DNA from: Bigelowiella natans CCMP2755
Taxonomy: Eukaryota; Protista; Cercozoa
Reading direction: 5' to 3'
Assembly: GCA_000320545.1 (NCBI GenBank)
Contig: ADNK01000344.1
Span: forward strand, 4,126 to 68,125
DNA length: 64,000 bases
Part shown: positions 53,414 through 55,000 of the stretch, in pieces
Layout: every line of letters begins with the position of its first letter
Numbering within the stretch: position 1 is the first letter of the stretch
The notes under the pieces: generated by a model
What the model was told of the DNA's origin: nothing
Database searches by the model: none
The model's input: only the letters and a program-made list of their open reading frames with translations
Translations under genes and position numbers: made by a program

Positions 53414-55000
53414 CATTGCAAGTGTCTTGCCACACTTTGGGAACGTTGTTTTTCATCTTTGTCTTTGTCTTTGTCTTTTGTGTGAAGTCCTGTTGGATGA
53501 GCCCTCTGGTGACTTGGACAACAAGGATCGCTGGGATGCCCACCAGCCCAGCCAGCTCGTCGACAGAGCCACAGCCGTTTGAAAGTTCCTGGTCAGGATT
53601 TGCAAGGATGGGTGCGTTGCGACGTCCCTCTCAACTCTCAGTTGCGGTGCCTTCTTGCAGCCTCACTTGCACGCCAACCTTGCAACGTGCTGGTTTTCAC
53701 ACCAGTGAGTCTGTCCCAGCCAGCTCGTTTTCAGCTCGCTCGAGGCACTGCGTTTCGCACTTTGCAAGTGTCACGCAACAGTTCAGCAGTGTGGTCAATT
53801 GGCAAACTTCCTTTCCCTTCTTTTCTTTCTTTTCTTCACTTCTTGTTTCTTCACGTTTTCCCCTCACTTGAAACTTGTTGTGAACGCGAACCTTCGTCCA
53901 CCATTGAGGAGGTCACGAACGCCAGATGAACGGGCCAGCATGACCCATGCTGGCATGACTCTCTCGTCGGCTCCTGTGGTGATACTTCACTCGTTCACCA
54001 GTTCAACATTTTCAAGGTGCGCAAGTTTAGCAACGTCGCTCTGGAACTGGCCACTGGCGAACTCCGCAACTTGCACGAGTTCCTTTCTTTGGCTTCACTG
54101 AAAACTCTTCCTCACCTTGTTTTCTTCTTCCTGTTCTTCTTTCAATTCATGGCCAGTTCTCCCGCCTGTGAAGTGAGTTTCCTGTTCACTTCCTTCGACG
54201 GAACTTCCACAGGCTAGCTAGCTAGGCACCAAGCGCAACCAGCATCACAGCGAGTTCACTTGCAATGCAAGACAGCGCAGCCGAACACTCTCCAGGCTCG
54301 TGCAACACACACAACGCCTCATCTGTGTTCTCCAGTGTGATTCATCACTCTGCAGCACTTGTCAGCTTAGCTGAAATGTGCACACAAGTTCAAATCGAAT
54401 TGGTGACCGCAAATTGCACTGCTAGCTCATGAGCTAGCTAGCTGACATGGTGATGGTGTGCGTTCACAAGTGAGCGCAATGACGTGACAATCAAAGTCAA
54501 CATTGATTGTTCAATTAGCAAGCAGCTGAGGCGCATCATCATACGCACAAACGTTTCGTTCGTGGCGTTTTCATCGACTCGCACAATGAACACAGTGCGT
54601 GTGATGCAGTGATGCACACACACACATCACACATGCCAGCATGCGCACGTCTGCAGTGAGCTGGTACAGAGCGAGAGATGACTTTTTCATCAGTCATGTC
54701 ATCAAGTTCATGGCCATGCTGACCGATTTGAAGGTTTCGAAGCAAAGACACAGACACTCCAGCAAGAAGCTCTTGCACATTGCGCAAGCATCAAGTCTGC
54801 TCAGTCTGTCAAGCCAACACGTGTCGAACGTTTTGCGATGCATCGATGGCGTCATCAACAGTGGTGATGAGTGGCACATATACACAGCATGCACACTGTG
54901 GCGCATGTGTTCAATGGCAAAATGCGAGGTGCAAACGTTCAACCGCAAGAATCAATCCTCTCTCGATACATGAAAAGATTGGCGCAAGATGATCACAGTA
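53414..55000. other. TpA-depleted spacer / older repeat interrupted by the LTR element (continues at ~47510-47698)
   Basis: No TA at all in 53414-53982. Removing the element and one TSD restores cgaggcactgagtttcgtgcattgcaagtgtc, which resembles the internal copy at ~53741-53772. Confidence 0.85.

What the first reader, a model, noticed from the sequence alone, without database searches (positions are those of the whole stretch)
53414..55000. TpA erased from intergenic DNA with CTAG spared: candidate RIP-like A:T->G:C mutator or DNA modification
Seen: no TA in 569 consecutive bases (53414-53982) and about 15 in ~1.55 kb by eye, many of them in CTAG or TTAG. TG/CA are in excess and CpG is plentiful. 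Genes, introns and the young LTR element nearby are full of TA. The same signature recurs at ~7100-8290, ~21850-22900, ~26385-27800 and ~44770-45760, always between genes. Established: 5mC decay depletes CpG, and fungal RIP creates TpA, so both predict a different pattern. Inference: a context-specific process converts TpA to TpG/CpA in untranscribed or repetitive DNA. Candidates are a mutagenic thymine modification (5hmU or base-J-like) or adenine modification/deamination. Survival of palindromic CTAG implies a flanking-base preference.
Basis: partly seen in the sequence, partly recalled or inferred. Interest (0 to 1): 0.9.

Follow-up and report, generated by a model that had tools for sequence, protein, structure and literature searches.

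The report
TpA-erased spacer from known algal mutator
A 1.7-kb gap between two genes of the alga Bigelowiella natans has lost nearly all its TA dinucleotides to TG/CA, which is the footprint of a TpA-specific hypermutation shown experimentally in a 2026 preprint. New here: the fine sequence context matches that experiment, CTAG is immune, and an active retrotransposon lands preferentially in such gaps.

Summary
There is no TA from 53412 to 53982. Over 53414-55000 there are 16 TAs (O/E 0.16), TG+CA O/E is 1.63 and CpG is normal. Neighbouring introns (TA O/E 0.97) and the LTR element (1.13) are unaffected.

The organism is Bigelowiella natans. A 2026 preprint (10.64898/2026.01.13.699255) showed TpA->TpG/CpA hypermutation there by mutation accumulation (MA). 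This scan also reached it before on other DNA (s1-706857, s1-417346).

New here:
- I mapped 150 of the preprint's mutations onto the genome. They prefer A/T flanks, and CTAG took 0 hits where 5.6 were expected.
- Survival of the ten NTAN classes in 29 TA-erased spacers tracks those rates (Spearman -0.93).
- CTAG is also created: a third of spacer CTAGs sit in N4-CTAG-N4 duplications, which are absent from the hypermutated giant-virus insert.
- The zone runs from the main mRNA end of one gene to about 340 bp upstream of the next gene's start.
- A transcribed Ty3/gypsy-like element with at least 22 near-identical copies split this zone. Seven of 11 other copies lie in equally TA-poor DNA, yet the element shows no hypermutation.

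The enzyme is unknown.

The parts
53418..55011 (.). Main part of the TpA-erased spacer. It is TA-free from 53412 to 53982. Its right edge lies at about the main mRNA 3' end of the right-hand gene.
   Evidence: TA O/E is 0.15 over 53418-54644 and 0.20 over 54645-55011; TG O/E is 1.4-1.7 and CA 1.8-1.9. RNA contigs X1 and X7 of the right gene end at 55034. Stranded RNA depth on the minus strand falls from 6.6 (55000-55199) to 0.05 or less (54600-54999).
47540..47698 (.). Left part of the same spacer, separated from the main part by the LTR insertion. The 342 bp between it and the left gene's start (47198-47539) have normal TA content.
   Evidence: Searches give the empty-site junction 47698|53418. 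TA O/E 0.48 here against 0.84 in 47198-47539.
47699..53413 (-). Young, transcribed Ty3/gypsy-like LTR retrotransposon inserted into the spacer. LTRs are 47699-48025 and 53087-53413 (TG..CA). The 4-bp target-site duplication CATT lies at 47695-47698 and 53414-53417.
   Evidence: the LTRs are 100% identical over 328 bp; protease and RT in one ORF, RNase H and integrase zinc-binding domain in the other; no integrase core (rve) hit; at least 22 full-length copies at about 100% identity. RNA depth in the thousands and a poly(A) site at 53166. TA O/E 1.13 with 397 TAs.
54214..54225 (.). (CTAG)3 mini-array, which holds three of the zone's six CTAGs.
   Evidence: An identical (CTAG)3 array is seen in L007. 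One 8-bp N4-CTAG-N4 event on a CTAG target would give exactly this (inference).
54421..54443 (.). Second CTAG cluster, containing an 18-nt perfect palindrome and the other three CTAGs.
   Evidence: sequence read directly.
53418..53484 (+). Right half of a dispersed repeat of about 70-90 nt that contains a hairpin. Its left half is 47673-47698, so the LTR element inserted inside it. A second, diverged copy lies at 53727-53836 and two more at 26640-26750.
   Evidence: at least 40 matches across the genome; alignment of 21 copies; no Rfam family; no tRNA.
54645..55199 (-). Last exon and 3' end of the multi-exon right-hand gene. Most contigs end at 55034; one extends to 54645. The three reading frames stop at 55158, 55139 or 55012.
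   Evidence: spliced joints with CT..AC ends (GT..AG on the minus strand) from 58956 down to 55199; records 3, 13 and 18; stop positions in the three frames.
45633..47197 (-). Unspliced mRNA of the left-hand gene (192-aa ORF at 46550-47128). The spacer lies upstream of its start.
   Evidence: three transcriptome contigs (L023-L025) align at 100% over 47197-45633.
26385..27800 (.). Second strong TpA-erased zone, lying upstream of an apparent minus-strand gene start (ATG at 26326).
   Evidence: TA O/E 0.22, 11 of 22 TAs are CTAG, three perfect N4-CTAG-N4 duplications.
7100..8290 (.). Moderate TpA-depleted zone.
   Evidence: TA O/E 0.45, TG 1.86, CA 1.89, 11 CTAG; five duplications.
21850..22900 (.). 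Weak TpA-depleted zone.
   Evidence: TA O/E 0.69; five duplications.
44770..45760 (.). Apparent convergent spacer that is rich in TG/CA and packed with CTAG. It is not TA-depleted overall.
   Evidence: TA O/E 1.07, 28 CTAG in 991 bp; nine duplications. It lies between the DNL zinc-finger ORF 44057-44638 (+) and the mRNA end at 45633.

Best explanation
This is an ordinary host intergenic spacer, mostly single-copy. It runs from the main mRNA end of one minus-strand gene to about 340 bp upstream of the next gene's start. It has been driven close to saturation by the TpA-specific A:T->G:C hypermutation process of Bigelowiella natans. On either strand the A of a TpA is changed to G, most simply by deamination to inosine, giving TpG or CpA.

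The process prefers A/T on both sides of the TA (W-TA-W). It disfavours C before the T and G after the A. CTAG carries the disfavoured flanks on both strands and is therefore effectively immune.

A separate process, confined to spacers, inserts CTAG together with a copy of the adjacent four bases. This adds new CTAGs on top of the survivors.

Transcribed units escape: exons, introns and the highly expressed LTR retrotransposon that has landed in the spacer. The enzyme and the cue that restricts it to such DNA are not identified.

Shown: the signature, its context match, the transcript boundaries and the two origins of CTAG. Inferred: adenine deamination, and the link to lack of transcription.
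For: Experiment (preprint): in MA lines, 230 of 231 mutations in the NCLDV (giant-virus) and virophage inserts are A>G or T>C, nearly all at TpA. That NCLDV insert has TA O/E 0.45 in my 100-kb sample.

This locus: TA O/E 0.16, TG+CA O/E 1.63, CpG O/E 0.76 against 0.78 in introns, and GC 0.50 against 0.33 in neighbouring introns. The TG+CA excess (about 124) roughly equals the TA deficit (about 83) plus the CG deficit (about 24).

Context match: I located the NCLDV insert on G000:C3187, with contig coordinate = scaffold_10 position minus 329226 (15 of 15 contexts matched). I mapped 150 TpA events onto it. Relative rates at -2 were A 1.49, T 1.11, G 0.87, C 0.58 (p=0.0025). At +1 they were T 1.52, A 1.22, C 0.82, G 0.46 (p=8e-5). 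CTAG took 0 events in 262 strand-targets against 5.6 expected. All 206 scaffold_10 TpA events by 3-nt context give chi2 30.9, p=9e-7.

In 29 TA-erased spacers (28.6 kb), the surviving density of the ten NTAN classes falls with the MA-derived rate: Spearman -0.93, p=1e-4, or -0.90 without CTAG. CTAG outside duplications is undepleted (1.12x background), while the other classes are at 0.085-0.38x.

CTAG creation: 52 of 153 spacer CTAGs have identical 4-mers on both sides, against a chance expectation of 0.4% and 0 for TTAG, CTAA, GTAC and TTAA. Only 1 of 131 CTAGs in the NCLDV insert does.

Boundaries and transcription.

Sparing of transcribed DNA: introns have TA O/E 0.97. The LTR element has 397 TAs and O/E 1.13, and 11 other copies are identical to one another.
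Against: - No de novo mutation has been observed in this spacer. Almost no targets are left, and I could not map the MA data to it.
- Direction (TA->TG/CA rather than the reverse) is inferred from the experiment elsewhere, not polarised at this locus. The only repeat available, about 90 nt long, was uninformative and shows CpG-type variation as well.
- TA loss accounts for about 6-7 points of GC, whereas the zone is 13-17 points above neighbouring introns and background, so composition is not fully explained.
- The preprint found hypermutation only in two viral regions plus 11 scattered TpA events, and frames the target as foreign DNA. That host spacers are current targets is not shown.
- The background for the NTAN analysis mixes exons, introns and spacers.
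- The 'transcription protects' reading rests on one locus with reads, plus the preprint's statement that the NCLDV insert is silent.
Confidence: 0.8

Rival explanations
1. The zones are decayed foreign DNA (old transposons or viral inserts). They were targeted because they were foreign, as the preprint proposes, and not because they are untranscribed spacer.
For: The preprint finds low-TpA coding sequences enriched in reverse transcriptase and DDE transposase domains. The zone contains a dispersed repeat of about 70-90 nt with at least 40 copies, and an LTR element has landed in it.
Against: Outside the short repeat, the 1.6 kb has no other match in the 91-Mb genome. Flanks of 12 LTR insertions in such zones are unrelated to one another. 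ORFs in the zones have no significant Pfam hit. The zone edges coincide with host mRNA ends. The one clearly foreign, repeated element present, the LTR retrotransposon, is untouched.
Confidence: 0.12
2. TA is avoided by selection. The spacer might need to be free of TATA-like or cryptic promoter signals, free of TAA/TAG stops, or have a particular DNA stiffness or nucleosome behaviour.
For: Both strong zones sit in the same position relative to a downstream gene, starting 70-340 bp upstream of its start. They share a conserved short repeat.
Against: The depletion follows the flank-dependent rates of an observed mutational process (Spearman -0.93). Lost TAs reappear as TG/CA in about the right number. 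The same signature is being written in real time in a silent viral insert. A 573-bp run with no TA at all is hard to explain by weak selection on non-coding DNA.
Confidence: 0.04
3. The TG/CA excess comes from ordinary 5-methylcytosine decay of CpG, and the TA loss is unrelated.
For: TG and CA are the products of CpG decay as well. Copies of the short repeat show CG/TG/CA variation at the same columns.
Against: CpG O/E in the zone (0.76) equals that of introns (0.78) and exceeds the window mean (0.70). The CpG deficit (about 24) is far smaller than the TG+CA excess (about 124). CpG decay lowers GC, whereas the zones are GC-enriched.
Confidence: 0.02
4. The footprint is the same but the chemistry differs. 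The T of TpA is modified (for example an O4-type or hydroxymethyl/glucosyl modification) and mispairs with G, rather than the A being deaminated.
For: By strand symmetry, every A>G event equals a T>C event on the other strand. The flank preferences found here fit either description.
Against: No known thymine modification gives clean T>C transitions at this rate. Adenine-to-inosine deamination gives exactly A>G. tRNA adenosine deaminases naturally act on an A that follows U33, and the preprint reports an ADAT2-like protein with the DNA-editing residues. None of this was tested here.
Confidence: 0.1

Closest known systems
TpA->TpG/CpA hypermutation of integrated viral DNA in Bigelowiella natans (Mettrop et al., bioRxiv 10.64898/2026.01.13.699255, 2026)
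   Same: Same organism. Same dinucleotide signature (TA lost, TG+CA gained, GC raised). Same tetranucleotide context dependence, as shown here.
   Different: The target here is a 1.7-kb single-copy host spacer between two expressed genes, not a viral insert. It is too short for the preprint's criterion of three consecutive 1-kb windows. Depletion is far deeper (O/E 0.16 against 0.45). The preprint does not mention flank preference, CTAG or the untouched active retrotransposon.
[quoted passage not shown]
   Same: A region-restricted, dinucleotide-specific transition mutator that reshapes the composition of non-genic DNA.
   Different: RIP changes C to T at CpA in duplicated DNA, creates TpA and lowers GC (established knowledge). 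Here TpA is destroyed, GC rises and the target is single-copy.
Deaminase hypermutation: AID/APOBEC on DNA, ADAR on RNA, TadA/ADAT2 on tRNA A34
   Same: Context-specific deamination that gives clustered transitions. ADAR and the tRNA deaminases act on an A preceded by U.
   Different: APOBEC targets C. ADAR prefers G after the edited A and many ADAT2 substrates have G35 (from memory). Here G after the A is the least favoured base, at 0.46x. No enzyme was tested here.
Targeted integration of LTR retrotransposons (yeast Ty3 and Ty5, chromoviruses)
   Same: An active Ty3/gypsy-like element whose insertions cluster in one class of non-genic DNA. Seven of 11 insertion sites have TA O/E of 0.46 or less, against 0-5% of background windows.
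   Different: No chromodomain or other tethering domain was detected, and not even the integrase core is recognised by Pfam. No shared target sequence was found. Selection against genic insertions could contribute.
CTAG 8-bp 'insertion scars' noted earlier in this scan (s1-417313, s1-417327, s1-417344)
   Same: N4-CTAG-N4 duplications concentrated in spacers.
   Different: In the finding's own zone the CTAGs form (CTAG)3 and palindromic clusters rather than simple scars. New here: scars are absent from the hypermutated NCLDV insert (1 of 131), so they are not a by-product of the mutator.

Membership tests
B. natans TpA hypermutation footprint (Mettrop et al. 2026) | TpA depletion (rho TpA <= 0.43) | tested here: met
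   TA O/E is 0.16 over 53414-55000, and 0.05-0.36 in 400-bp windows.
B. natans TpA hypermutation footprint (Mettrop et al. 2026) | Coupled CpA+TpG enrichment (rho >= 1.52) | tested here: met
   TG 139 and CA 182 against about 197 expected gives 1.63.
B. natans TpA hypermutation footprint (Mettrop et al. 2026) | Flank dependence of surviving TAs matches that of the de novo mutations | tested here: met
   Spearman -0.93 (p=1e-4) across ten NTAN classes. CTAG took 0 of 150 events and is undepleted in spacers.
B. natans TpA hypermutation footprint (Mettrop et al. 2026) | De novo A>G/T>C mutations at TpA observed in this region | not testable with these tools
   The window's position in scaffold coordinates is unknown. 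The single read-laying run showed no variants in the zone, and only 16 targets remain.
B. natans TpA hypermutation footprint (Mettrop et al. 2026) | Target is of viral or foreign origin | tested here: not met
   No Pfam hit in zone ORFs. The zone is single-copy apart from a repeat of about 90 nt. It is bounded by host mRNA ends. Ancient foreign origin cannot be excluded.
B. natans TpA hypermutation footprint (Mettrop et al. 2026) | Cluster of at least 3 consecutive 1-kb windows (the preprint's cluster definition) | tested here: not met
   The zone is about 1.75 kb and is split by a 5.7-kb insertion.
Fungal RIP | C>T at CpA in duplicated DNA, creating TpA and lowering GC | tested here: not met
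   TpA is destroyed, GC is raised to 0.50 and the DNA is single-copy.
5mC/CpG decay | CpG depletion relative to neighbouring DNA | tested here: not met
   CG O/E is 0.76 in the zone against 0.78 in introns and 0.70 over the window.
Ty3/gypsy LTR retrotransposon (the inserted element) | Identical TG..CA LTRs, 4-5-bp target-site duplication, and PR-RT-RNase H-integrase domain order | tested here: inconclusive
   LTRs are 328 bp and 100% identical, and the TSD is CATT. RVT_1, RT_RNaseH and a weak aspartyl protease and Integrase_H2C2 are in gypsy order. No rve integrase core or chromodomain was detected.
N4-CTAG-N4 insertion scar | CTAG flanked by identical 4-mers | tested here: met
   52 of 153 CTAGs in 29 spacers, and 24 in this window. 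In the finding's own zone there is only the middle unit of (CTAG)3, at 54218.

The most novel reading that the evidence does not exclude
The TpA mutator is not primarily an anti-viral, foreign-DNA system. It acts on any DNA that lies outside active transcription units, and it has already erased TA from thousands of short host intergenic spacers. It recognises W-TA-W and cannot touch CTAG. The resulting TA-free, CTAG-seeded spacers then serve as preferred landing sites for a currently active Ty3/gypsy-like retrotransposon, which escapes the mutator because it is transcribed.
Probability: 0.35. Interest if true: 0.65.

Novelty: new member of a known kind. Interest (0 to 1): 0.5.

Why it matters
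The process itself, a eukaryotic DNA mutator that turns TpA into TpG/CpA, is remarkable, but it has been reported. This locus adds four constraints on how the process works and what it is for.

1. A measurable extended signature: A/T flanks are preferred and CTAG is immune. Any candidate enzyme must reproduce it.
2. Evidence that the same process has saturated ordinary host spacers, not only viral inserts.
3. A counter-example to the 'foreign DNA' model: an expressed, multi-copy retrotransposon that sits inside erased DNA with no mutations.
4. A link between erased spacers and retrotransposon landing sites.

It also warns annotators. TA-free DNA has only TGA stops, so it yields long spurious ORFs.

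Tried and rejected
- Polarising substitutions with repeat copies. Only a dispersed element of about 70-90 nt is shared with other loci. Its alignment shows CG/TG/CA/TA/TT mixtures at the same columns and cannot give direction.
- The LTR family as a polarity test. All sampled copies are identical, so they carry no information beyond 'not mutated'.
- A known RNA gene as the target of LTR integration or as the identity of the short repeat. There were no tRNAs. There were no Rfam hits above threshold, and the microRNA hits are microsatellite artefacts.
- Protein remnants in the zones. There were no significant Pfam hits (PHD_4 at E=0.003 is below the cut-off). Zone ORFs 25799-26326 and 7565-8053 are not on record as called genes.
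- A tethering domain in the LTR element's integrase region. None was found.
- One-family origin of the zones. Rejected, because flanks of 12 insertions are unrelated.
- A larger random genome background.
Only the splice joints and the three frames of its last exon were read.
- No complex or structure job was run, because none bears on the claim.
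Full report
**1. Observation**

The window has TAs at 53410 and 53983 and none between them, a 573-bp gap. Over 53414-55000 there are 16 TAs (O/E 0.16). TG O/E is 1.44, CA 1.82 and CG 0.76, and GC is 0.50. Six of the 16 TAs are CTAG and three are TTAG. At local base composition a run of this length has a probability of about 1e-16 per start.

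A 400-bp sliding profile shows the same depth of depletion only at 26400-27800. Depletion is moderate at 7200-8400 and 25600-26200, and weak at 14600-15200 and 22000-22600.

- 26385-27800 is strong (0.22).
- 7100-8290 is moderate (0.45).
- 21850-22900 is weak (0.69).
- 44770-45760 is not TA-depleted overall (1.07), because 28 of its 77 TAs are CTAG.

Nine introns of the neighbouring gene have TA O/E 0.97 and the LTR element 1.13.

**2. Anatomy**

The LTRs at 47698-48025 and 53087-53414 are 100% identical. The element is 47699-53413 with TG..CA ends and a 4-bp target duplication, CATT. Removing it joins 47698 to 53418, so the TA-poor DNA at 47540-47698 is the left end of the same spacer.

The element has protease and RT in one ORF and RNase H plus an integrase zinc-binding domain in the next. 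This is gypsy order, although Pfam sees no integrase core or chromodomain.

Gene context comes from RNA:
- Three transcriptome contigs place an unspliced minus-strand mRNA at 47197-45633, with its 192-aa ORF at 46550-47128.
- Laid RNA contigs show a multi-exon minus-strand gene to the right. Its introns have CT..AC ends, that is GT..AG on the minus strand. Its last exon starts at 55199 and ends at 55034 in two runs and at 54645 in one.
- In stranded raw reads, minus-strand depth drops from 6.6 (55000-55199) to 0.05 or less (54600-54999).

The erased DNA therefore runs from about the main poly(A) site of one gene to about 340 bp upstream of the next gene's start. It is a tandem (tail-to-head) spacer, not a convergent one. 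It carries only low plus-strand RNA (depth 0.3-13.5).

**3. Organism and prior knowledge**

Earlier notes of this scan name the genome as Bigelowiella natans. Two of them (s1-706857, s1-417346) had reached the same reading on other pieces and pointed to a 2026 preprint. I read that preprint.

Its main results are:
- In 15 MA lines, 231 of 302 nuclear point mutations fall in a silent 186-kb giant-virus (NCLDV) insert and a 25-kb virophage insert.
- 230 of the 231 are A>G or T>C, nearly all at TpA.
- The rate is about 1000-fold above background.
- The authors also report 124 genomic clusters of TpA-poor, CpA+TpG-rich windows.
- They propose an ADAT2-like adenosine deaminase acting as a defence against foreign DNA.

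The text does not mention CTAG or flanking context.

**4. Is this spacer the same process? A context test**

The preprint's Table S2 gives a 3-nt context for each mutation. I found the NCLDV insert through its capsid gene on G000:C3187 and fetched 100 kb of it. Its TA O/E is 0.45, the preprint's value.

By 3-nt context, the 206 scaffold_10 TpA events depart from target availability (chi2 30.9, p=9e-7). T-A-T is hit at 1.6x and T-A-G at 0.44x.

Twenty listed positions fixed the coordinate offset: contig = scaffold_10 minus 329226, with 15 of 15 contexts matching. This let me read the wider context of 150 events. On the strand whose A changes:
- Position -2: A 1.49, T 1.11, G 0.87, C 0.58 (p=0.0025).
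- Position +1: T 1.52, A 1.22, C 0.82, G 0.46 (p=8e-5).
- Positions -4, -3, +2 and +3 are not significant.
- CTAG took 0 events in 262 strand-targets against 5.6 expected (Poisson p about 0.004).

I then defined 29 TA-erased spacers (28.6 kb after masking microsatellites) in this window and in loci fetched for other reasons. I compared the density of each of the ten strand-symmetric NTAN classes with that in the remaining 84 kb. Survival falls with the MA-derived site rate:
- Spearman -0.93, p=1e-4.
- Spearman -0.90 without CTAG.
- ATAT stands at 0.085x, CTAA/TTAG at 0.38x, and CTAG outside duplications at 1.12x.

The spacers therefore carry the experimental process's fingerprint beyond the dinucleotide level. 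This is my main reason for assigning them to it.

**5. CTAG is both spared and created**

Immunity explains why CTAG is not depleted. It does not explain why total CTAG density in spacers is 1.4x background.
- 52 of 153 spacer CTAGs are flanked by identical 4-mers (N4-CTAG-N4). The figure is 0 for TTAG, CTAA, GTAC and TTAA, and 3% or less for other palindromic tetramers.
- These duplications occur at 1.8 per kb in spacers against 0.6 per kb elsewhere.
- In the hypermutated NCLDV insert only 1 of 131 CTAGs has this structure.

The duplication process is therefore separate from the mutator and specific to spacers. This confirms earlier notes s1-417313, s1-417327 and s1-417344 and adds the NCLDV contrast.

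In the finding's own zone the six CTAGs form a (CTAG)3 array (54214-54225) and a palindromic cluster (54421-54443). One duplication event on a CTAG target would give exactly (CTAG)3, but that is an inference.

**6. Not one TE family**

Apart from a dispersed element of about 70-90 nt (47673-47698 plus 53418-53484; a second copy at 53727-53836; two more at 26640-26750), the 1.6 kb has no other match in the genome. The element has no Rfam or tRNA identity. Its alignment could not polarise substitutions.

**7. The retrotransposon**

- The genome holds at least 22 full-length copies at about 100% identity.
- Eleven sampled copies are identical to one another and differ from this one by one mismatch and one indel.
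- The element is transcribed at depths in the thousands, and LTR variants seen in RNA reads are not TA>TG/CA changes.
- Each copy has its own 4-bp target duplication.
- After removing the element, 600-bp windows centred on the 11 other insertion sites have TA O/E of 0.46 or less in 7 cases. Eight sites lie inside a zone as defined above.
- Such windows make up 5.7% of this window and 0.9% of 60 kb of arbitrary genome (binomial p 5e-7 and 1e-12).
- The flanks are otherwise unrelated.

So the element either integrates preferentially into erased spacers or survives only there.

By my arithmetic from the preprint (211 events, 3132 generations, 6169 TAs), the per-TA rate is about 1.1e-5 per generation. 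At that rate a 397-TA element would gain a mutation about every 230 generations. Identical copies therefore mean the element is not targeted, although it is foreign, repeated and embedded in erased DNA.

Together with untouched introns and zone edges at mRNA ends, this suggests that the cue is lack of transcription or the associated chromatin state, and not foreignness. This is an inference from one locus plus the preprint's report that the NCLDV insert is silent.

**8. Verdict**

The phenomenon is described in a preprint and was found before by this scan, so this is a new instance of a known kind.

What is added here:
- The flank signature and the immunity of CTAG.
- The separation of CTAG creation from the mutator.
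- The transcript-bounded extent of the zone in host DNA.
- The association with an active, unmutated retrotransposon.

The enzyme, the targeting cue and the agent of the CTAG duplications remain unknown.

Noticed in passing
window 47699-53413; loci L012-L022: A Ty3/gypsy-like LTR retrotransposon has at least 22 near-identical full-length copies and very high RNA coverage. Seven of 11 other insertion sites lie in DNA with TA O/E of 0.46 or less, against 1-6% of background windows. This is an apparent landing preference for TpA-erased spacers.
   Followed up: yes
window 47699-47709 (LTR terminus) against preprint Table S2: An 11-nt de novo 'insertion' in MA line 13 (scaffold_8:334281) is exactly the reverse complement of this LTR's first 11 nt. 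Another (scaffold_10:305721) matches its first 5 nt. Several other listed insertions end in ACA. These may be junctions of new LTR insertions called as short indels.
   Followed up: partly
window 47673-47698 + 53418-53484, 53727-53836, 26640-26750; L003, L006-L010, L017, L020: A dispersed element of about 70-90 nt with a conserved hairpin occurs in at least 40 copies, always in TA-poor spacers. Three of 12 LTR insertions lie inside a copy. It matches no known RNA family.
   Followed up: partly
window 44770-45760: This apparent convergent spacer holds 28 CTAGs per kb and nine perfect N4-CTAG-N4 duplications. Overall TA O/E is therefore 1.07 despite a TG/CA excess. It belongs to the same spacer class, but the CTAG process dominates it.
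   Followed up: partly
window 53071-53871, 53579-53929, 54641-54973, 7565-8053, 27118-27459: TA-free DNA lacks TAA and TAG on both strands, so it yields long ORFs (up to 266 aa) with no family hits. Such ORFs may account for many of the unannotated low-TpA 'genes' listed in the preprint.
   Followed up: partly
G000:C3187:60001-160000 (L026-L035): In the MA data, G-flanked events are strand-asymmetric on scaffold_10: 3 A>G at TAG against 17 T>C at CTA, with similar target counts (759 and 788). The other three flank classes are symmetric.
   Followed up: no
window 56886-57521: A 53-bp tandem repeat of about 12 units lies mostly within the intron at 56825-57421 of the right-hand gene and runs on into its next exon.
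   Followed up: no
whole window: There is an unusually high density of microsatellites, including (TA)n, (TG)n, (CT)n, (ACT)n and (GAT)n, often abutting one another.
   Followed up: no
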